Source of the DNA: Salpingoeca rosetta
Lineage: Eukaryota > Protista > Choanoflagellata
DNA length: 64,000 nucleotides
Direction: 5' to 3'
Assembly (NCBI GenBank): GCA_033442325.1
Contig: JAWQFM010000036.1
Coordinates: 376,719-440,718 of the forward strand
Numbering within the stretch: position 1 is the stretch's first letter; every line of letters begins with the position of its first letter. Positions 1 to 12,537 of this stretch are shown piece after piece. The position numbers and the translations under genes were made by a program. A model generated the notes under the pieces. It saw only the letters and a program-made list of their open reading frames with translations. It had not been told where the DNA came from and searched no databases.

Positions 1-3000
1 GCGGTGACCACAACGCTGTACACGGGCACCGCCTCCCTGTCCAGCACCACACGCGTGGTGATCTGGCCCGTCTCAGCGTCAATCGCAAACTCGCTTGCGT
101 GTGTGGCCAGCGAGAAGCGCACAGCCTGCGTGCCATCCTCGTCTGCGTCCTGTGCCGCCACGCGCACAACGGCCGTGTCGACGGCCGCATTTTCCAGAAC
201 AGAGGCAGCGTATGCCGTCTGCGAGAACGCGGGCGCGTTGTCGTTCACATCATCAACGGTGATGCGCACAGTGAGTGCCACGCGGTTTGTGGGCTGTGGT
301 GGCGGGAATGACGGTGACGCGGGCGTACCCTCTGCCAGGGCGAGCGTCGTTGCATCCGCCACCTCCAGGGTCAGCGTGTATGTGACAAACGTCTCGTAGT
401 CCAGTGGCTTTGCCACAGACAGCCTACCAGACGTGGCGTTGATGGCAAACGCACCGTCCAAGTTGCCGCCCACAATCGCGTAGCGTACAGCGCCGTTGGT
501 GTTGGTGTTGGTGTTGGTGTTGGTGCTGGTGCTGGTGGTGCTGTCGCTGGCGTGGTACTCGTCTGCGTCTGTCGCCACATATGTAAACACCTCGCTGCCC
601 ACCGCTGCGCTCTCCGCAATGCGGAAGCTGGTGGCCGCCTGTGACGCCGCTGTGAGCATGGGCGCGTTGTCGTTGACGTCCAGTACCGTCACCAGCACCG
701 TCGCGGTGACCGTGTTCTGCATGGCACCGTCGACGTTGTCTGTGGCGACAACCTCAAAGCTGTACGCTGCCTTGGACTCGCGATCAAGCGGCGCAGTTGT
801 GGTGATGACGCCAGCTGGCGAAACGGCAAAGACAGAAGCATCCGTGCCAGCAAGCGCCAGAGCAACCCGCGCGTTGTTGCCGCTGTCTGCATCGCTCACC
901 TCAACGCTCAGCACGCTCGTTGCTGTGGTGGCCGCCTCGCTCACCGCAGCGGTGAACGTGCCAGAGATAGGCAGGTTGTCAAACACGGGAGCGTTGTCGT
1001 TGGCGTCGGTCAGGGTCACTGTGACACGTGCGGGCAGCAGCGTCATGCGGGGTGCAGGCATGTGCCCGTCGCTTGCCGTCACCTCAAGCACGTACGTGCG
1101 CACGTCCTGCTCGTAGTCCAGAGCTGTCAGCGTCGTGATGACGCCCGTGCTGGCGTTGATGGCAAACACGGAGCTCACACTCACGCCGTTCACTTCCGAG
1201 TCTGCGAGCACGTACGACACGTGCGTGTTGGCTGCGCTGTCTGCATCTGTGGCCATCACACTGGCAACAGCGGTGCCGACATCAGCGTTCTCAACAAGCG
1301 TTGCCTGCACATCCGTGTCCACAAACACGGGGTTGTTGTCGTTGATGTCAACCACATTCACCGTCACCACTGCCGTCGTCTCGCGGCCATCTGGGTTGCT
1401 GGCAACAACAACAAGTGTGTGTGTCTGGTGCATCTCAAAGTCCAGCGCGCCCACGGGCGTCACCTCGCCAGTGAATCGGCCAATCGTAAAGGCGAGTGGC
1501 TCTGGCGCGGAGACCTCATTGGCAGCTCGCAGCGTGTACTCCACCTGTGCGTTTGTGCCCACGTCTTCGTCCGTGCTGGAGACACGCAACACAACGTCGG
1601 CTGTGGTGGCGTTCTCAAACACCGACACTTGCATGGGCAGGTCAACAAACACGGGGGCGTTGTCGTTGACATCAAGCACCGTGAGCACAATGGTTGCGTC
1701 CGTGGACAGCTGCACGGGTGCGCCGCTGTCACGCGCGCGCACCACGAGCGTGTGTGTCTCCGCGGTCTCGCGATCAAGCTGTCCGCCCGTCAGCCGCACT
1801 TCGCCCGTGGTCGCATCCACGGAAAACAGGGGCGCGGTGGCATTGATGAGCGAGTACGTGACGCGGGCGTTTGCGCCGGCGTCGGCATCACTCGCAGCAA
1901 CCGTGCCCAGCAGCGTGTTGGGTGCCGCATCCTCGGATACAGACCACGCGTAGTAGGCGTTGCTGGTGAACACGGGCGCGTTGTCGTTGACATCGCCCAC
2001 CACCACGGGCACAGCCACCGTGGCCGTGAGGGGCGGCTCGCCGTTGTCTGCCGCCTGCACCGTCAGGTTGTATGCAGCATCGGTTTCACGATCCAGAGGG
2101 CCCGTGGTCCGCACGACACCAGTTGCCGCGTCAATTGCAAACAGGCCCGCGGCGTTTCCGCCCACAATAGAGTACGACACGCGGTTGAACCCGGCCGTGA
2201 TGTCCGCATCGGTGGCAAACGGCGCGGCCGCAACCTTGCCTGCAGGCAAATTCTCCGCGACCACCTGCGCGCCGACATCGGCGTTGAAGACGGGCGCCTC
2301 GTCGTTGGCGTCCACCAGCGATACGACCACCAGCACGTCCGCAGTCTTGGGCTGCGGTGTGCCTTGGTCCGACGCGCGCATCGTAAGCGTGTAGGAAACA
2401 ACGCTCTCAAAGTCCAGGCGCCGCGCAACAGACACGACACCCGTGGTAGGGTCCACGGCAAAGTCGCTGTTGGTGTTGCCGGCCACAATAGCATACGCCA
2501 CGGTGCCGTTGCCGCCCAGGTCAGCGTCACGGGCTGCCACCTGCACGCCAATGGGCGTGCCTGGCGCCGCGTCCTCCAGCACTATAACAGATGTAAAGTC
2601 GCCATGCGCATACACGGGGGCGTTGTCGTTGATGTCCAGGACATGCAGCGTCACGGTGACGCTGGTCACCAGCGGCGTGGCGCTCACGTCTGCTGCCGTC
2701 ACCTGCACCTGGTACGTGTCCTGTGTCTCGCGGTCAAGTGCACGGCGCGTGTACATGGCACCCGTGGTCGCGTTGATGCGCAGGACATCCGTGTCGCCGC
2801 CTGCAAGCGCATACACAATGCGGGCGTTGTCGCCAATATCCGCGCTGGTGGCACGCACCGTGCCCACAAACTGCACGGCGTTGTCGTTGTTGTTCGCTGC
2901 ACCGGTCACGCCAGCGGTGCTACCGTCCGCCTCCGCCACGGTGAAAGCGTAGCTCTGCTGCTCAAACACGGGCGGGTTGTCGTTGATGTCCGTGATGTGC

Positions 3001-6000
3001 ACAGTGACGTTGACAGCGGAGGACGGGCCAGTCGCGTCGTTCAGGTTGGCAGCCACCACCGCCAGCACATACCCGTTTGGTGCCGCCTCGCGATCAAGGC
3101 TGGCGGTCGTGGTGATGGCCCCACTAGTGCCGTTGATGGCAAACCGGCCATCAAATGTGTCTGCAAGCGTATACACCACCACTGCGTTGTCGCCCGCGTC
3201 GATATCGGTCGCCTGCACCGTCACCACGTGCTCGCCAGCAGGGCGGTTCTCAACCAGGTTGATGGGGCCGTACGCCGGCTGTGCAAAGCGCGGGGCGTTG
3301 TCGTTGATGTCCGTGCTCACCACGCGAACGGTGAAGGACGTGGACAGCTGCTGCGGTGTGGTGCCGACGTCGCTCGCCACCACACGTGCCGCGTACACCT
3401 CCCGCTGTTCCCTGTCCGTGCTGGCAATGTACAGCACGCCGTCGACAATCGAGAACATGCTTGCCTGTGCATACGCTGTGTCGATCCTCAGCGTCGGCTG
3501 TGCGTTGGGCGCGCTGTCTGCGTCTGTCACGTTCACGGCAGTCAAAGCAGTGCGCACGCCTGCTTCCTCCTGCACGGTAAACGACAGCTCCGTGCCGTCC
3601 GCAACGGCATTGCCACCGTCCACCGTCACGACAGGTGCGTTGTCGTTTTCGTCGACAACGTCCAGCACCAGCCTGCGCTGCGCCATGCGTGCTGCAGCTG
3701 CGTCCACGCCAGTCCCGCTCGCGCCGCCATCGCTGACAGACACGACAACGGTGACCTCCGTGTGGGTCTCGTAGTCCAGGGGCGCAAGCAGGGTCAGCTC
3801 GCCCGTGGCCGCGTTGAGCGACAGCGACGACGCAAGCTCAGCCGGCTGCACGGAAACAATGGCAAAGGCGAGGGTGGTCGCCTCGTCAGCGTCTCGCGCA
3901 ATGAACGCTGTCACGGTGCGGGGCGTGTTGCCGTTCTCGTTCACAGACACGCGCGCCGGCGGTGCGGCAGTGTCAAACACGGGGTCATTGTCGTTGACAT
4001 CCAGCACGTTCACCACCACGGTTGTGGTCGCCACCTGCCTGTCATCTGCGTTGCTAGCTTGGTCCGTGGCCACGACAACAAACGTGTATGCGCCCACATC
4101 CTCGCGGTCCAGGGCGCTGCTGACGGAAATCACGCCCGTCTGCGCATCAATGACAAACGGCAGCAAGGCGGCTGTGTTGTCGATGGCAAAGGCAACGGCG
4201 CCGTTGTCGCCAGCATCGGCGTCAGGTGCATACACGCGACCAGCGGCGGCTGGTGCCGACGTATTCTCAGACACGTTGAATACGTAGCCAACAGCACCAT
4301 CAGTGGCACTGCCATCGGCGTCAACAAACACGGGCGCGTTGTCGTTCTCGTCCAGGATGGCGACGGTGATGTTGAAGTCGACGCTGCGGGGTGACGGAGA
4401 CCCAGCATCGCTGACGCGCACCAGCAAGCGGTACTCGGCATACGTCTCGCTGTCCACCGCCGACTGCACCACCAGCACGCCCGAGGCCGGCTCAAGGAAG
4501 AACGGGTTTGCACCACTGCCATCGGGCGCCAGCATCGTCCACGTCTCGCCGCCATCACCTCCCATGCTAACGCTGCTGTTGGATGCCGCTGTATTGGTGC
4601 GCGGCTTTGCGGCTACCGATACGAGCGTAAAGGTGAGCGCAGCGTTGTCGCCGCTGTCTGCATCTGTGGCTGCAAAGTTGTACAGCTGCTGCACGGGAAC
4701 AACGCCCTCCGACACCTCCAGGCGCGCACCGGGCGGCATGTTGGTGATGACCGGCGTGTTGTCGTTGACATCGGTGACTGTGACGTCCACCCGCGCGGAG
4801 GAAATGAGGGGCGAGTTGCCGCTGAAGGCAAGCACGCGGAACGAGTATGATGGCGTCTGCTCAAAGTCCAGTGGTGCCGCGAGCGTCACCTCGCCCGTGG
4901 TGGCGTTGATGGCAAACGGGTTGTGAGAGCCTGTAATGTAGAGGTCATACGTGAGTGGGTCGTTGATACCCGTGTCCGGGTCGCTTGCTGCGACGGTCAC
5001 CAGCACCGTGCCCACGACAGCATCCTCAGCCACGGTGTGCGCGTACACGCCCTGCTGAAAGCGGGGTGCGTTGTCGTCGACGTCGCCAACCTCAACCGTG
5101 ACGTTGAGCGTCGCCGTGGCCTGGCGCACGCCCTGGTCTGTCGCCGTCACCATCAGGTTGTGCACAGCAACAGCCTCGTGGTCCAGCCCTGGGCCGCGGG
5201 GCGCGACCGTGATGTTGCTTGCATACACCGTGACGGGCTCGGCAATGCCAGGTACGGCAACAACCACCACACGAGCAGGGGTAAGTGCAAACGCGCCGGC
5301 ATCGTTGCCCGTGGCGAACGCAAACGCAATCTCACCCTCGCTGCCGACGTCGCCGTCCACCGCATACACGGTACCGACAACGGATCCCAGCGCCGCGTCC
5401 TCAAGCACATGCTGCGTGGTGGCGGATATGGGGCCCGCCTCTGCCGGTCCGTCATCACCGGACACAAACACGGGCACAAACTTGTTGGTGGCGACCACGA
5501 CCACGTCCAGCACGGCGCTGCCGGTCAGCTCGGGTGCAGCTGTGTTGGCGGCAACAAGCGACAGGCGAACCGTCATGGCCCCGCGCACGGCCTCCGGCAG
5601 CGGACCAACAAACACCACGTCAAACACGTTCTCTGTTGCGGTCGTCGTCGTGTTGACTGCAAACGCGCCGGCAAGGGCGCTCTCCACCGTCGATGATGGC
5701 GATGGTGGCGATGGGGCTGTGATGGCAACGGATGTGATGCGGTTGACAAGCGACACATCGCCGTCAACAACACTGACACGGGCCAGGGCGACTGGGCCCT
5801 CCTGCACGTCCGAGATGGTCACCGTGTACGTGCTCTGCTCAAAGCGCGGGGCAACGTCGTTGGCGTCCGTGACAAACACGCGCACATGTGCGGTGGAGGA
5901 TCGGCTGCTGGCACCGCCGTCCCGCGCAGTCACTGACAGCATGTATGTCGCCTGCGCGTCCGTCTCCAAGTCGATGCTGCTGGTGCGGGTGGTGATCACA

Positions 6001-9000
6001 CCCGTGGCCGCATCAATCGCAAAGAGCGCGCGCGAGGCCACATCAAGCTCATACTGCACTCGCGCATTGTCGCCGGCGTCCGCGTCCGTGGCGGTGACGG
6101 TGGCCACCACCACGCCCTGCTCGCCCTCCGCAATCGTGGCGTTGTACTGCGCAAACTCAAACACGGGCGTGTTGTCGTTGATGTCGGCGATGGTCACCTG
6201 CATGGTGTGTGTGGATGCCAGGTCACTTCCCGGGTTGTATGCGGTCACCACGACGTCGCCCGTGATGGCCTGTGCAGCCAGGGCCTCGCGGTCAATGTCA
6301 GCAGCAACGGCAAGCGCCCCCGTCGTTGGCGACAGGGTGAAGAAGCGCGCAAACGCTCCGCCAGTGATGTTGTAGCGGACAGCAGAGGCCGGCGTGTTGG
6401 CCTGGTCGGCGTCCGTCGCCACAAGCTCTTGCACGACCGTGCCGACAGCGGTGTGCTCAGCCACGTCCAGGCGCGCCGGTGGCGGTCCCGTAAACACGGG
6501 GGCATTGTCGTTGATGTCCGCAATGGTGACGGCGACCGTGACATCAGCAGCGGCAAGCCCGTCTGATGCCGTCACCGTCACAGTCACGGCATCGCCATCC
6601 GTCTCCCTGTCGAGCGGACGTGCAAGCACAAGGGAAGCGTCGCCCGTGTCACCGTCCTGCACCACCGCAAACATTGTCGGCTCGCTCACGGTGTATGTGA
6701 GGGTGGAGAAGGCGGGCGTTGTGTCGGCATCGGAGAAGCCAAGCGAGGCAACCACGACAGTGCTGGCAGGCAGCTCCTCCTGCACCGTCGCCGCCAGGGA
6801 TGACTGGAGCACGCGCGGTGGCTCGTCGTTGACGTCAACTACTGCAATCGTCACCGTGTGCTGCACCGTGTTCACGTCATTGGTGCTGGTACTGGTGGAA
6901 GCAGGGCGATCGCGCACTTGCACGCGAAGGGAGTGTGTCTGCTTCGCCTCGTAGTTGAGCGGTGCCACCAGCGTCACCTCGCCTGTGCGCGCGTCCACGG
7001 CAAACGCATCGCTGTCGCTAAAGTCCGACAGGAGCGCAAAGGAGAGGTTGGCGTTGGGCGGCGTATCTGTATCGACGGCAACCACGCGCGTCACCAGCGT
7101 GCCAACCGGCGTGTCCTCGCTCACGTTCACAGCGGCGCGCGGTGCAGTGACGGTGGGCACCACGTCGTTCACGTCGGCGATTGTGATGGTGAGCAGCGTG
7201 GTGGTGTTGACGCCGTGGAACGGATCCTCAACAACGATCGTCACCTGCAGCGACGTCACGGCCTCGCGGTCAATGCTCTGCACGAGCGACACGACGCCCG
7301 TCGCACGGTCAACCGCCAGCAGCGATTCTGCCGTTGTGGTGGCATCGCCGTTCGCCAGGTAGAAGCGTGGCGCGGTCGTGGTGGTGTCGGCGTCCGTGGT
7401 GGCGATGGTGGTGAGCACGGTGCCGGGTGCGTCTGCCTCGGAGACGGTCAGGGCAACGCGGTCCATTGCAGCAACAGCCGCGTTGTCGTCCACGTCACCA
7501 ACTGTCACCGTGATGTTGAGCGATGCCGTCTGCGCAGGTGTGCCCAGGTCACTTGCCAGCACGATGAGCGTGTAAGCAGCGGTTGCCTCGCGGTCGAGTG
7601 GCGACGTCACTGTCACCGCGCCCGTCGTCGCGTCCACGTCAAACGCCGCGTCCGCGCTTGGTGTGCTGTCTGCAGAGACGAGCGAGTACTGCACCAGGTT
7701 GCTGGGCGACGTGTTGTCGGCGTCGGCAGCGCTGACGGTGGTGAGCAGGGTGGGCACGGCCACGTCCTCGGCCACGGCGAGCGACAACGCGGTGCCCTCG
7801 CGGAAGACGGGGGCGTTGTCGTTCGTGTCGCGCACGACAACAAACACCTTCGTGGACGAGGTGCGGCTGTTGGCACCGGCGCGGTCGCGGGCAAAGACGT
7901 CAAAGTTAAACAGCTGCTGCGATGCCGTGTCCTCCGCATCAAACGTGCGCATGGCTGTGATGGCGCCCGTGGACGCGTCAATGGCGAAGGTCTGCAGTGC
8001 GGCGGCGTCACCCACGATGGAGTAGTCGATCACGCCGTTGCTGTTCGCGTCATCGTCCACAGCTTGCACCGTCAGCACGTGTGCGCCCACGGGCTGCCCT
8101 TCGTCCACCTCGACAATGTACATGCTGGACTCAAACTGCGGCGTGTTGTCGTTGACATCGAGCACGCTGATGACCACTTGCATGCGGTCAGTCTGGCCCG
8201 TGGCTGTGTCCGTGGCAATGAGCGTGGCGACATACGTGCTCTGCGTCTCCCTGTCGAGGGGCGTGGCCGTGGAGATGGCGCCCGTGTCAGCATTGACGCT
8301 GAAGAGGGCTGAGGACACGCCTTGGATGGTAAAGGCCACGGCCGCATTGCCCCCGCTGACACCGCTTGTGTCCAGGCGCACGTTGCTTGCGGGCAACACA
8401 AGCGTGCCTGCACTGGCGTTCTCTTCCACGGTCGCGTTGACGCGCATGTCCAAGAGCATGTCCTTGGTATTGTCGAGCACGGTGAGGGACCAGGTGCGCA
8501 GCACAGTTGCGTTTGCATCCAGCAGCTGCAGCGTTGCTGTCTCGTCGCCCTCAACCACGGCATCGGCAACAGCCGTGATGCTCACGGCAAACGACGACGA
8601 CGACGACGACGACGACGGTGTCAGGTGCACCTCCAGCACAGCTGCTGTTGCTGTTGCAACGGCAGGGAGGATGTCGCCCCGATCGCCAAAGTAGAGGTCG
8701 GTGCTAGTCTCAGCAATGGGGGTGAGCGCCACGTCCTCAAGCGTGCCGTCCGAGGAGAGGGAGACGGAGCCGGCCGTCACCACTGCCAGCTGCTGCGGGC
8801 TGCACTGCACAGCTGCAACCGCGTGCGTGATGGCAGACACCTCGCTCACGTCCACAAACGCATTCACGTCAGCGTCAAACTGGTACTCGATTGCAGCCAG
8901 CCGCTCCACAGACACAAACAGCCCAAGAGGCTGCTGTTGCTGTTGTTGCTGTTGTTGCTGCTGTTGTTGGGCCATTGGTGAGCCCACGGTGAAGAGGAGG

Positions 9001-11389
9001 GCGTGCACAGCCACTTTGTTTTCCGTGTCGAGAGCAATGGATTGGGTGTGGCCCACATGCATGGGTGCGGCAGTGGCCGTCGTGGCTGCAGCCGTGATGG
9101 CGGTGTGGGCGTTGAGAAGACGGAAGATGGCCACGGTGCTGCCTTGATCGGCAACAAGCGCAACTGTCAGGTCGCAGTCACCGGCAATGCTGGATGACGG
9201 CTGGCAGACAGCAGACACAGACTCTGCACCAGAGGTGGCGAGCGTGAGCATGGGCGCAAAGGTGCCGTCAGCCTGCATGCGCCACACGCTGCTTGGCGTG
9301 TCGAACGACGCCTGCTGCGAGTCGTACTTGTTTGCGAGCACAACCAGGACGTGATCCTGGTCATCGACAGCGCTGTTGGCGGGGACGTGGACGGCGGTGA
9401 CGTCTGTCGCGCCCTGCGTCGCCAACTCCTGCACCTGCACGTATGCACCGAGCGTGGCGTTGAAGCGGAGCACGGGCGAGGCCAAGTTGGTGTTGCCGCT
9501 GTTGTCCTGCGAGTTGGAGAATATGAGCGTCGTCGCATCGCCCCGCTGCGCAAACGCACATGCGGATGCGCCCACCGTGGACACGCGCTGCAACAGCACA
9601 AACTGCTGCGTAGTCGTGTCCCACGCGTACACGTTCGATTTGGTCGCAAAGTCGTTGCCTGTTCGCGTGTTGGCGATAGCGAGATGCTCAACGCCACCCA
9701 CGCGCGCGCGACACAAACCAGCGGGCTTGTCGGAGACGACAAGCGTCTGCACCAGCTCAAGCGTCGTGGCGTCGTACACGTTCACGGAACCTGTGCCCAC
9801 GCCTTGCTCGGAGACAATGTGCAGTTGCGTGCCCGGCTCTGGCCACGAGCACACCACGCTTGCCGGGCTCCTTGCCGTGTTCACCGATCTCAGTGGCACA
9901 ACCGCAAAGTTTGAAGCTAACGATAAGAATGAAGTGAACAGTTGAGGACGGGTGAGTCAATTTGGTTGTGTGTGTGTGTGGGTGTGTGGGTGTGTGATTG
10001 TGTGTGTGTGTGTGTGTGTGTGGGACACAACAGACGGTTTGCAGGTCCCATGTTTCCTTTTTGTTCATGTGTGTTTGCGTCCGGAGTCCGTGTATAGGGG
10101 GTTTGTTTATTTTTTTTATTTTTTTTTGTGTTTGTATTGTATTTTATACATTTGAATTTGGATTTCTTCTCTTTCNNNNNNNNNNNNNNNNNNNNNNNNN
10201 NNNNNNNNNNNNNNNNNNNNNNNNNNNNNNNNNNNNNNNNNNNNNNNNNNNNNNNNNNNNNNNNNNNNNNNNNNNNNNNNNNNNNNNNNNNNNNNNNNNN
10301 NNNNNNNNNNNNNNNNNNNNNNNNNNNNNNNNNNNNNNNNNNNNNNNNNNNNNNNNNNNNNNNNNNNNNNNNNNNNNNNNNNNNNNNNNNNNNNNNNNNN
10401 NNNNNNNNNNNNNNNNNNNNNNNNNNNNNNNNNNNNNNNNNNNNNNNNNNNNNNNNNNNNNNNNNNNNNNNNNNNNNNNNNNNNNNNNNNNNNNNNNNNN
10501 NNNNNNNNNNNNNNNNNNNNNNNNNNNNNNNNNNNNNNNNNNNNNNNNNNNNNNNNNNNNNNNNNNNNNNNNNNNNNNNNNNNNNNNNNNNNNNNNNNNN
10601 NNNNNNNNNNNNNNNNNNNNNNNNNNNNNNNNNNNNNNNNNNNNNNNNNNNNNNNNNNNNNNNNNNNNNNNNNNNNNNNNNNNNNNNNNNNNNNNNNNNN
10701 NNNNNNNNNNNNNNNNNNNNNNNNNNNNNNNNNNNNNNNNNNNNNNNNNNNNNNNNNNNNNNNNNNNNNNNNNNNNNNNNNNNNNNNNNNNNNNNNNNNN
10801 NNNNNNNNNNNNNNNNNNNNNNNNNNNNNNNNNNNNNNNNNNNNNNNNNNNNNNNNNNNNNNNNNNNNNNNNNNNNNNNNNNNNNNNNNNNNNNNNNNNN
10901 NNNNNNNNNNNNNNGTTGTGTGTGTGTGTGGTGGTGTGGTGTGTGATGTGTGTGTGTGTGTGTGTGTGGCGAACACAACAGTACGTTTGTCAGTGCACAT
11001 GTGTGCGTGTGTACGTGTGTGTGTGCGTCCGTGTGTGTGTGTGTGTGCAGGCAAACGAGCTAGCATGTCGTCGCTTTGAGCTGCAACAGAAATAGAAACA
11101 CGCACGAAGGTGCACACGTCATCTATCGCACGAAGGTAGGTGCTACACAAACACATTACATCCCCCTTATACCTTGCGCGCGGGTGCTCCAAGTTGCAGT
11201 TTGCGAGGTGCCGGTGAGGTACACTTGATCAAGGCCATCCACAAAGACATCGACGTCAGTGGATTCTCCTTCACGGAGCGAGATGGCGATGGGGTCGTCT
11301 TGTGCATTGCATGCTGCTGTCGCCAGTAGCGTGCACACCAGAGTGGCGCCAAGCAGCAGCCGGGCAAACCGACCAACTGCTGTTCTCAT
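1..11389 (-). CDS. Giant cadherin-repeat protein, 3' end outside the window: signal peptide, Calx-beta-like segments, EAR/EPTP-like repeats and about 25 cadherin repeats. Exons 11389-11173 and 9916-<1
   Basis: ATG at 11389 gives MRTAVGRFARLLLGATLVCTLLATAACNA (signal peptide). The donor CAAG|GTATAA (11173) and acceptor TCGTTAG|CT (9916) are phase-compatible (G+CT=Ala). Exon 2 appears open for more than 3300 codons to the window edge; the ORF track lists no stop-terminated ORF in this frame. About 24 DxNDN/DxNDxxP linkers occur roughly every 330 nt between 8150 and 240, with LDRE/LDYE/LDFE and AxDxD motifs. Confidence 0.95.
10176..10914. other. Assembly gap (N run) inside cadherin intron 1
   Basis: Run of N flanked by (TG)n. 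Confidence 1.
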
Positions 11390-12537
11390 CCTGTTGACGT
11401 GTATGAGCGCTACACAGGCAGGGTAATGGGAAATGGGAATGTGAGCGTGAGAGCGGGTAATAGGGGGGGGGGGGCATGATCCTATGATCGGGTGGTTGGG
11501 TAGCGATTGTGCATGGCAGGATGATAGGTAACGCGTAGGGCGTGGCAATGGAGCAGCAGTTTGTGCGATGATGCGAGGCGGGCAAAACACCTCCGCTATA
11601 TGCTCACCTTTCTTCCGAGAAGCGTCACCACAAAACAAACGGGACAACAAGCACCCAGTTGCTCGTGCGGCGCTGGGTGACGTCGGGATGGGGATGGGGA
11701 TGGGGATGGATTGGTGGGTGTTGAAAGTGAGTGTGTGTCGTGGTATGTGTGTGTGTGTGTGTGTTTCGTGGTATGTGTGTGTGTGTGTGTTTGTGTGCGT
11801 GGCTGTGTTGTGTGTGATTGTTGTTTGTGGGTGGGGCGTCGATGGTTTTATTGCTCAAAGTTGGGGAATAGGGGAAGGGGCGAAGAGGAAAATTCACACA
11901 CATCATTCACGAAAGGAGGGAGTGGGCTAACGGTAATTTGAAGTTGGCGGCAATAGTGTTGTTGTTGTTGTTCTGTTGTCGCTGTGGTGGTGCTGCGTTT
12001 CGTTGAGGTGAACACGAATGCGGCAGCACTACCAGCAAGCGCATCATGTGCTAGTTACATACTTCTTCTTCTCCATGTTGTTCAGACAGTGAGTGCTTGC
12101 CAATCGTTTTCCGAGTTGGCGACACCGCACCAACAATGTGTGCGTGTGACTGAACATGCAACGGGCTCTCTGGATTGCTTGGATTGGGGGGTTCAATACG
12201 AAGAATAGAAAGCAAGATGGAAACCTGCGTTCAGATCGATTAGGAACGAAAAAGGGAAAGGGAAAGGGAAGAAACAGCGCAAGCAACAGTGAAGAGAGGG
12301 GAGGGGGGAGGCACGCCACCATGAGGGGCGTGAAGAAAGACAACGCGCAGCAGCGCAAAGCGAGAGAAAAAACGACGCAAATGAGAAACACAACACCAAC
12401 TAGTTGGAGGGGGGGGGGGAACGACATCCAATCACGCCAAATCTCGTCGTCTGTTCACATGTCGATACACACATACACACACACACACACACACACGAAT
12501 GTAAAGAGACAACACAACGCATGTTTGACGCCAACAA

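What the first reader, a model, noticed from the sequence alone, without database searches (positions are those of the whole stretch)
8520..11389. Cadherin headed by EAR/EPTP propeller repeats and a Calx-beta-like motif, a VLGR1/TSPEAR-like head on a cadherin stalk
Seen: before the first cadherin repeat (about 8450), exon 2 encodes at least three repeats of about 45 aa: LAIANTRTGNDFATKSNVYAWDTTTQQFVLLQRVSTVGA, LIFSNSQDNSGNTNLASPVLRFNATLGAYVQVQELATQGA and VVLANKYDSQQASFDTPSSVWRMQADGTFAPMLTLATSGA (about 9685-9225). These are followed by VSITAVADAVVEGDETATLQL (about 8585-8525). Established: the first pattern is the EAR/EPTP signature (S-x-I/V-Y-x-W...F...Q-x-I-x-T-x-G-A) of LGI, TSPEAR and ADGRV1/VLGR1; the second is the acidic Calx-beta motif. 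In animals ADGRV1 (EAR plus Calx-beta) and CDH23/PCDH15 are separate stereocilia-link proteins. Inference: a pre-animal protein uniting these modules, and a candidate inter-microvillar link in a collar. The supplied ORF track misses it entirely.
Basis: partly seen in the sequence, partly recalled or inferred. Interest (0 to 1): 0.85.

Follow-up and report, generated by a model that had tools for sequence, protein, structure and literature searches.

The report
EAR-propeller-headed giant cadherin gene
A transcribed gene of a choanoflagellate-type genome encodes a giant calcium-binding cadherin rod whose outer tip is an EAR/EPTP beta-propeller instead of a normal cadherin tip. At least three, probably four, other protist loci share this design, so the far end probably binds a different partner than animal cadherins do.

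Summary
The assembly gap (10176-10914) lies upstream, inside the putative intron between a signal-peptide exon (11389-11173) and exon 2 (from 9916). It does not touch the head-stalk fusion.

The head is a true EPTP/EAR relative. It gave 309 hits, best E 5.8e-49, and every hit I scanned in Pfam carries EPTP. Named animal ADGRV1-like and TSPEAR-like proteins are among the hits. An alignment-based AlphaFold model (pTM 0.78) is a beta-propeller whose best Foldseek matches are LGI1 EPTP.

Only three blades keep the canonical repeat sequence. Six blades are modelled and the seventh is unresolved.

The Calx-beta claim is only partly supported. Pfam finds nothing. A Calx-beta model built from an animal ADGRV1-like protein matches the motif better than 2,000 shuffles. 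That is where ADGRV1-type proteins carry a Calx-beta C-terminal half.

EAR-headed cadherins form a small family: three further loci, probably a fourth, plus a paralogue this scan had already reported elsewhere in the same genome. Stranded RNA reads cover the gene at low depth.

The collar-link role and the "ancestral union" idea are untested. Choanoflagellates also have a separate ADGRV1 orthologue.

The parts
11173..11389 (-). Putative exon 1: ATG, signal-peptide-like start (about 28 residues, nt 11389-11306), then 44 mature residues. GT donor at 11172-11171.
   Evidence: Sequence read. The join to 9916 is in phase. Stranded RNA reads cover 11075-11328 in the same orientation as exon 2. No junction reads were listed.
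9917..11172 (-). Putative intron holding the assembly gap (N at 10176-10914), flanked by (CA)n-type microsatellites.
   Evidence: RNA depth on the gene's strand is zero from 9932 to 11074, and a few reads of the opposite orientation lie at 10948-11201. DNA contigs of other runs stop at 9958. The content of the gap is unknown.
8760..9866 (-). EPTP/EAR beta-propeller (exon-2 residues about 17-385). Six four-stranded blades are modelled and the seventh is ill-defined.
   Evidence: AlphaFold2 with alignment A1: pTM 0.78, pLDDT above 90 for residues about 45-240. Foldseek's top 7 matches are LGI1 EPTP, E 1.4e-11. VIA-align gives Z 23.1 to LGI1, tied with other propellers. 309 homologues, best E 5.8e-49.
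9225..9704 (-).
   Evidence: Blade HMM 46.5, 35.0 and 17.7 bits. Pfam EPTP 23.7 bits.
8931..8969 (-). Run of 13 glutamines inserted in blade 6.
   Evidence: Low-confidence helix in the model.
8469..8759 (-). Segment of about 97 residues between propeller and first cadherin repeat. Candidate diverged Calx-beta (C-terminal half), with an 8-serine run at 8592-8615.
   Evidence: Not a cadherin repeat. No Pfam family. Language-model neighbours are Calx-beta clusters at 0.80, a lead only. A profile of three family members against the Calx-beta alignment gives hhalign P 0.008 over HMM positions 49-93.
8514..8603 (-). Calx-beta-like acidic motif region (contains VSITAVADAVVEGDETATLQL, 8585-8523).
   Evidence: HMM from the Calx-beta repeats of ADGRV1-like P0114: 11.4 bits, HMM 67-97, 0 of 2,000 shuffles as high. 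In full-length context the score is only 4.1 bits, about the level of the best chance hits in 718,540 background residues.
3..8468 (-). 25 contiguous cadherin (EC) repeats. The 25th is cut by the window edge, so the C-terminus lies outside the window.
   Evidence: Pfam Cadherin E=0, 24 stretches. The own-repeat HMM finds 25 repeats, and 22 of 24 complete linkers carry DxNDxxP-type calcium motifs. RNA reads cover 7900-8661 across the head-stalk boundary.

Best explanation
This is one transcribed minus-strand gene for a giant secreted or membrane-anchored cadherin. Exon 1 supplies a signal peptide. Exon 2 encodes, without interruption, an EPTP/EAR beta-propeller, a roughly 100-residue connector that is probably a diverged Calx-beta remnant, and at least 25 cadherin repeats that almost all keep their calcium-binding linker motifs. 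Shown: the architecture, the homology of the head, the propeller fold, transcription, and the recurrence of the same design at other loci. Inferred: the cadherin array forms a calcium-stiffened rod more than 100 nm long, which holds the propeller far from the cell surface. Because the first cadherin repeat is capped, binding is probably done by the propeller, a protein- or ligand-binding module in LGI1, to a different partner rather than by a cadherin tip-to-tip handshake. The module was most likely acquired by domain shuffling within holozoans, perhaps from the Calx-beta/EAR cassette of the ADGRV1 lineage.
For: One open frame 9956..3. Cadherin and EPTP by Pfam. The head has 309 homologues, best E 5.8e-49. 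All 24 hits scanned in Pfam carry EPTP. The hits include the animal ADGRV1-like P0114 at E 8.4e-09 and the TSPEAR-like P0135 at E 4.6e-08. The family profile hits only LGI1 in the PDB, E 2.2e-33. Propeller model pTM 0.78, with best Foldseek matches LGI1 EPTP. 25 EC repeats with 22 of 24 calcium linkers. Stranded RNA reads cover exon 2 and exon 1 and none lie on the gene's strand between them. The same head-then-cadherin order occurs in P0104/L001, P0119/L002 and P0063. The heads of these loci, plus P0032 whose downstream gene is unannotated, form a clade with the window's head at 96/86 support. A paralogue was reported by this scan elsewhere in the genome.
Against: Only three blades keep the repeat sequence, and the rest are recognisable only in the model at pLDDT 50-75. 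The seventh blade and the propeller closure are unresolved. No ligand, localisation or phenotype is known. The C-terminus (membrane anchor, tail) lies outside the window. No spliced read confirms the exon 1-exon 2 join, and the gap may hide exons. Geometry alone does not separate this model from Sec13-type propellers. The Calx-beta assignment fails Pfam and is not seen in homologue P0104 taken alone.
Confidence: 0.6

Rival explanations
1. Collar link: the protein spans between neighbouring microvilli of the feeding collar, as CDH23/PCDH15 and ADGRV1 do between stereocilia, with the propeller as the joining end.
For: The rod length and calcium motifs suit a filamentous link. The module is related to the EAR domain of ADGRV1. 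Sponge choanocytes express VLGR1 and cadherins with microvillar-link partners (PMC4942974).
Against: There are no localisation data for this protein. RNA depth is low in the two runs laid. Choanoflagellates have a separate ADGRV1 orthologue (PMC12716839).
Confidence: 0.15
2. Receptor for matrix, theca or bacteria: the propeller binds extracellular matrix, theca material or prey or cue bacteria, and the cadherin rod is only a spacer.
For: The closest EPTP relatives are bacterial and dinoflagellate surface proteins combined with many other adhesion modules such as C1q, F5/8C, bacterial Ig and tail-fibre chaperone domains. This shows a general-purpose binding head.
Against: There is no binding evidence. 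This overlaps the best explanation and differs only in the class of ligand.
Confidence: 0.15
3. Passive cap: adhesion is homophilic through the cadherin repeats, and the degenerate propeller has no binding role.
For: Four of seven blades have lost the repeat consensus and one carries a poly-Q insert. The window's head has the longest branch in the trees.
Against: The head-plus-stalk design is kept at several divergent loci. Three blades remain under recognisable constraint.
Confidence: 0.07
4. Gene-model artefact: head and stalk belong to different genes or are brought together by misassembly.
For: An assembly gap lies nearby (10176-10914).
Against: The gap is upstream of exon 2. Head and EC1 are contiguous in one frame. 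Independent contigs of other runs span 7900-8925 and 8973-9958 without differences, and RNA reads cross the boundary. Other loci show the same order.
Confidence: 0.03

Closest known systems
ADGRV1 / VLGR1 (EAR domain flanked by Calx-beta repeats)
   Same: It has an EAR/EPTP propeller that is significantly similar to this head: the Tubulanus ADGRV1-like P0114 scores E 8.4e-09. In ADGRV1-type proteins a Calx-beta N-terminal half directly precedes the propeller, and a C-terminal half follows it in P0097. Here a Calx-beta-like motif follows the propeller at the matching place.
   Different: There is no array of Calx-beta repeats and no GAIN/7TM in the part seen; the stalk is made of cadherin repeats. 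No Calx-beta N-terminal half was detected before the propeller. The tree link to ADGRV1 EARs is unstable. Choanoflagellates have their own ADGRV1 orthologue (PMC12716839).
LGI1 EPTP domain (7-bladed propeller that binds ADAM22/23)
   Same: It is the best Foldseek match of the model (E 1.4e-11, TM 0.53/0.63). It is also the only PDB family hit by the profile of this head's relatives.
   Different: There is no direct sequence hit between the head and LGI1. There is no LRR domain. LGI1 is a small secreted protein, not the tip of a cadherin.
TSPEAR
   Same: EAR repeats; a mollusc TSPEAR-like protein (P0135) is among the hits.
   Different: No laminin-G/TSPN domain here, and a cadherin stalk instead.
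FAT4 / CDH23-like giant cadherins and other choanoflagellate cadherins
   Same: Long arrays of calcium-binding EC repeats. The best full-length matches are about 30% identical FAT4/CDH23-like proteins.
   Different: None of the 120 best cadherin matches carries EPTP. Here EC1 is not the N-terminal tip, so a CDH23/PCDH15-type EC1-2 handshake is unlikely.
EAR-headed cadherin paralogue in the same genome (scan finding s1-433368)
   Same: According to the scan's note: EAR head, about 24 cadherin repeats, same genome.
   Different: It is a different locus.

Membership tests
EPTP/EAR repeat family (Pfam PF03736) | Tandem repeats of about 45-50 residues matching the EPTP profile above Pfam's cutoff | tested here: met
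   23.7 bits against a cutoff of 21 on the head alone, but 15.3 bits, below the cutoff, when the whole protein is scored. Three repeats score 46.5, 35.0 and 17.7 bits on a homologue-derived blade HMM.
EPTP/EAR repeat family (Pfam PF03736) | Significant similarity to accepted members | tested here: met
   309 hits at E<=1e-3, best 5.8e-49. All 24 hits scanned in Pfam carry EPTP, and named ADGRV1-like and TSPEAR-like animal proteins are among the hits.
EPTP/EAR repeat family (Pfam PF03736) | Seven-bladed beta-propeller fold | tested here: inconclusive
   The model shows six clear blades. The region for a seventh (residues 356-398, perhaps with exon-1 strands that were not in the model) has pLDDT below 50. 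VIA-align ties it with six-bladed Sec13 and seven-bladed LGI1.
Calx-beta domain (Pfam PF03160) | Match to the Calx-beta profile above the curated cutoff | tested here: not met
   No hit at E<=10 on the head, on the 118-residue segment or on longer pieces; none on exon 1 or on the P0104 connector.
Calx-beta domain (Pfam PF03160) | Acidic strand motif (..DD..E..E.F.V.L) in the right place in a domain-sized segment | tested here: inconclusive
   The ADGRV1-derived HMM gives 11.4 bits over HMM 67-97, with 0 of 2,000 shuffles as high. L002 gives 9.0 bits over HMM 38-79 at the same position. Family hhalign P 0.008. In full-length context the score is only 4.1 bits, and the acidic residues are not kept in P0104 or L002.
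Calx-beta domain (Pfam PF03160) | Beta-sandwich fold | not tested
The confident model stops at residue 398, before this segment.
Cadherin superfamily | Tandem EC repeats with calcium-binding linker motifs | tested here: met
   Pfam Cadherin E=0. 25 repeats, with 22 of 24 linkers DxNDxxP-type and LDRE-type motifs in most.
Cadherin superfamily | Membrane anchor and cytoplasmic tail | not testable with these tools
   The frame runs off the window at nt 3.
ADGRV1 / VLGR1 | Long Calx-beta array plus GAIN and seven-transmembrane domains | tested here: not met
   Only Cadherin-type families follow the head over 2,800 residues. The C-terminus was not seen.
CDH23 / PCDH15 tip-link cadherins | EC1 at the free N-terminus, forming the EC1-2 handshake | tested here: not met
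   EC1 starts at residue 483 of exon 2, behind the propeller and connector.
LGI / TSPEAR | LRR (LGI) or laminin-G/TSPN (TSPEAR) domain before the EAR propeller | tested here: not met
   No such Pfam family in the head or in exon 1.

The most novel reading that the evidence does not exclude
EAR-headed cadherins are a conserved, so far undescribed family of choanoflagellate-type protists. Their tip is the same split Calx-beta-plus-EAR cassette that sits inside ADGRV1/VLGR1. One ancient binding module would then have been mounted on two kinds of long stalk (Calx-beta array and cadherin array) before animals arose, and its ligand could be shared between the collar of choanoflagellates and the ankle links of hair cells.
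Probability: 0.25. Interest if true: 0.75.

Novelty: new variant of a known kind. Interest (0 to 1): 0.55.

Why it matters
Choanoflagellate cadherins are used to work out what cadherins did before animal cell-cell adhesion existed. A cadherin whose tip is replaced by an EAR propeller shows that the cadherin rod can serve as a stalk for an unrelated binding head. It also gives a concrete, testable module, the propeller, for finding a pre-animal cadherin ligand in a species where tagging and knockouts are possible (PMC7314544). On the full-length protein the EPTP signal falls below Pfam's cutoff, so routine annotation would probably miss the head. None of the library papers that mention both choanoflagellates and EPTP describes such a cadherin. 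If the weak Calx-beta/ADGRV1 link holds, it would tie this head to the Usher-protein toolkit.

Tried and rejected
- Single-sequence AlphaFold of the 488-residue head gave pLDDT 35 and was unusable.
- phmmer of the head, and of the connector, against PDB sequences found nothing meaningful.
- A word-indexed protein search with the head region, for lengths 1,825-5,806, found no hit and not even a self-hit. The window's protein is therefore not in that collection at that length.
- The same search with the P0104 head found no further EPTP-plus-cadherin protein.
- A metagenome scan with the two-head alignment returned 318 pattern matches, none confirmed.
- I tested whether the connector is a degenerate cadherin repeat ('EC0'). 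The own-repeat HMM and hhalign gave no match, so I rejected this.
- I tested whether the mature part of exon 1 is the N-terminal half of a split Calx-beta. It scored -0.2 bits, and 450 of 2,000 shuffles scored as high. This is not supported.
- A sister relation of the cadherin heads to ADGRV1 EARs had 96/97 support in a 40-row tree. It was lost when the window's head and P0114 were left out, so I treat it as a possible long-branch artefact.
- The careful 92-row tree did not finish.
- Nichols et al. 2012 (PMC3420208), the catalogue of S. rosetta cadherin architectures, is not held in the library. I could not check whether this architecture was drawn there.
- Searches for the accession numbers of the related loci in papers found nothing.


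Full report
**1. What is in the sequence**

The minus strand holds one open frame from 9956 to 3, 3,318 codons, which runs off the low end of the window. That is why the mechanical ORF list omits it.

An AG acceptor at 9918-9917 puts the start of exon 2 at 9916. Upstream, an ATG at 11389 opens a 72-codon stretch with a signal-peptide-like start. It ends at 11173 before a GT. The join is in phase: one base plus two bases make an Ala codon.

**2. The assembly gap**

The N run 10176-10914 lies between those two exons, flanked by (CA)n-type repeats. It is therefore upstream of everything the finding rests on.

I laid two stranded RNA runs and two contig sets on 7900-11700. The results were:
- RNA reads cover 7900-9931 and 11075-11328, nearly all in one orientation (first mate on +, which in most stranded libraries means a minus-strand RNA).
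- No RNA reads of that orientation lie between the two exons. A few reads of the opposite orientation lie at 10948-11201.
- Depth is low: 20 and 68 reads from about a quarter of each run.
- No junction reached the three-read threshold.
- Contigs of other runs end at 9958, so nothing bridges the gap.

The exon 1-exon 2 join is thus consistent with all the data but not directly shown. Exons hidden in the gap cannot be excluded. Independent contigs reproduce 7900-8925 and 8973-9958 without differences, and reads cross the head-stalk boundary.

**3. The head is an EPTP/EAR propeller**

Sequence evidence:
- Pfam gives EPTP 23.7 bits (cutoff 21) on the head alone. It gives 15.3 bits on the full protein, so routine annotation would miss it.
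- An exhaustive HMMER search with the 488-residue head found 309 proteins at E<=1e-3, best 5.8e-49.
- All 24 hits I scanned in Pfam carry EPTP; the ten best score 167-991 bits.
- The similarity covers head residues about 43-240.
Outside them there are only faint remnants.

Structure evidence:
- With an alignment of 90 homologous propellers (A1, whose consensus is seven EPTP repeats), AlphaFold2 gives pTM 0.78.
- pLDDT is above 90 for residues 45-240. Six four-stranded blades are modelled, and the tail after residue 356 is poorly defined.
- Foldseek's seven best PDB matches are all LGI1 EPTP (E 1.4e-11 to 9.8e-10), about 50-fold or more ahead of the next match, a designed propeller at 4.5e-08.
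- The A1 profile hits only LGI1 among PDB sequences (E 2.2e-33).
- By geometry alone, LGI1 (Z 23.1) ties with Sec13/Seh1-type propellers (Z 24).
- The family assignment therefore rests on sequence. The blade count (six or seven) is open, and the missing blade may need exon-1 residues that were not modelled.

**4. The stalk**

A repeat HMM built from the protein itself finds 25 back-to-back cadherin repeats, from residue 483 (nt 8468) to the window edge. Of 24 complete linkers, 22 carry DxNDxxP-type calcium motifs. Pfam reports only cadherin-type families there. This is the sequence signature of a calcium-stiffened rod. At about 4.5 nm per repeat (general knowledge of cadherin structures), the part seen would exceed 100 nm.

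**5. The connector and the Calx-beta question**

About 97 residues (8759-8469) separate the propeller from EC1. The negative results are:
- No Pfam family matches them at E<=10.
- They are not a cadherin repeat.

A language-model search puts Calx-beta clusters nearest, at 0.80, which is only a lead.

One EPTP hit, P0114, is named ADGRV1-like (Tubulanus). Pfam finds 11 Calx-beta stretches in it, plus EPTP. I built a Calx-beta HMM from its repeats. Four results point towards Calx-beta:
- The window's connector scores 11.4 bits over HMM positions 67-97. No shuffle out of 2,000 reaches this.
- In homologue L002 the neighbouring HMM positions 38-79 match at the same place, at 9.0 bits.
- A three-sequence family profile aligns to HMM 49-93 with hhalign P 0.008.
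- In P0114 a Calx-beta N-terminal half (HMM 1-55) lies about 50 residues before the first detected blade. In P0097 a C-terminal half (HMM 49-116, 45.5 bits) follows the propeller about 40 residues after its last blade. ADGRV1-type EARs therefore appear to sit inside a split Calx-beta, and the window's motif lies where the C-terminal half would be.

Four results weigh against it:
- In full-length context the window's score drops to 4.1 bits. That is the level of the best chance hits in 718,540 residues of background.
- P0104 alone shows nothing.
- The acidic residues are not kept in the homologues.
- No N-terminal half is detectable in exon 1.

I rate a diverged Calx-beta remnant at roughly even odds. 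Its fold was not tested.

**6. A family, not a one-off**

- Among the 150 listed EPTP hits, P0104 also matches the cadherin region. It carries both Pfam families and aligns colinearly with the window's head, connector and EC1. Its contig (L001) continues with more than 30 cadherin repeats after an apparent intron.
- P0119 (L002) and P0063 are EPTP heads followed on the same strand by cadherin genes. P0032 is a close relative of these heads, but the gene after it is unannotated.
- In a 40-row maximum-likelihood tree, these four heads and the window's head form a clade (96/86). The four alone have support of 100.
- None of the 120 best full-length cadherin matches (FAT4/CDH23-like, about 30% identity) carries EPTP.
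- The scan had already reported an EAR-headed cadherin at another locus of this genome, which it attributes to Salpingoeca rosetta. I did not verify the species or see that sequence.

**7. Relation to animal proteins**

The best-scoring EPTP relatives are microbial: a bacterial protein and Symbiodinium 'TSPEAR' proteins. These carry varied partners, such as C1q, F5/8C, a tyrosine kinase, bacterial Ig and a tail-fibre chaperone domain. Animal ADGRV1-like and TSPEAR-like proteins appear further down the list.

One tree joins the cadherin heads to ADGRV1-type EARs (96/97). The join vanishes when two long branches are removed.

Published work finds ADGRV1/VLGR1 orthologues in choanoflagellates themselves (PMC12716839, PMC4942974). 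The cadherin is therefore better read as a product of domain shuffling than as an ancestral protein that animals later split.

**8. Function**

Nothing here tests function. The most economical reading is a rigid cadherin stalk that presents a propeller as a heterophilic binding tip. Reasons: EC1 is not free, and EPTP propellers bind partner proteins in LGI1 (titles of the LGI1-ADAM22 structures). A collar-link role is possible but unsupported.

**9. Verdict**

This is a new variant of a known kind, a cadherin with an EAR-propeller head. It is of moderate interest, and this scan has already seen it once as a paralogue.

Noticed in passing
window 9959-10010 and 10915-11075: Long (CA)n/(CACA..) microsatellites flank the assembly gap on both sides, and contigs of other runs also stop at 9958. 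The repeat is the likely cause of the gap.
   Followed up: partly
window 8931-8969 and 8592-8615: A run of 13 glutamines sits inside propeller blade 6, and a run of 8 serines sits inside the connector. Both were flagged as repeats when reads were laid.
   Followed up: no
window 11456-11700: RNA reads of the opposite orientation (first mate on -) lie just upstream of the cadherin's ATG in run X15. This suggests a divergent transcript or a neighbouring plus-strand gene.
   Followed up: no
window 1062-4394 (+) and other long plus-strand ORFs: Antisense ORFs of up to 1,110 codons lie opposite the cadherin coding sequence. The RNA orientation and Pfam hits favour the minus strand, so these look like shadows of G+C-rich coding DNA.
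   Followed up: partly
P0114 (ADGRV1-like, Tubulanus) 1428-1818 and 580-803; P0097 445-512: In ADGRV1-type proteins the EAR propeller appears to be inserted inside a Calx-beta domain (N-terminal half before it, C-terminal half after it). A PAN domain seems likewise inserted in another Calx-beta of P0114.
   Followed up: partly
P0064 (2,739 aa, Logan assembly): This protein has nine EPTP stretches, an Ig-like domain and a C-terminal tyrosine kinase. It is an EPTP-headed receptor tyrosine kinase of unknown organism.
   Followed up: no
P0001, P0003-P0005, P0008, P0010, P0033, P0053, P0076, P0143: EPTP propellers are common in bacterial and dinoflagellate proteins and are joined to many different modules (C1q, Kelch/TIG, DUF7483, F5/8C, Lcl_C/invasin, Peptidase_S74). 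The domain is far from animal-specific.
   Followed up: partly
L001 2755-2900 and window intron: The homologous gene in L001 also has a microsatellite-rich stretch just upstream of the propeller exon, translated as VRVCTVRVCTV in the automatic gene call. This hints at a similar exon 1-intron-exon 2 layout.
   Followed up: no
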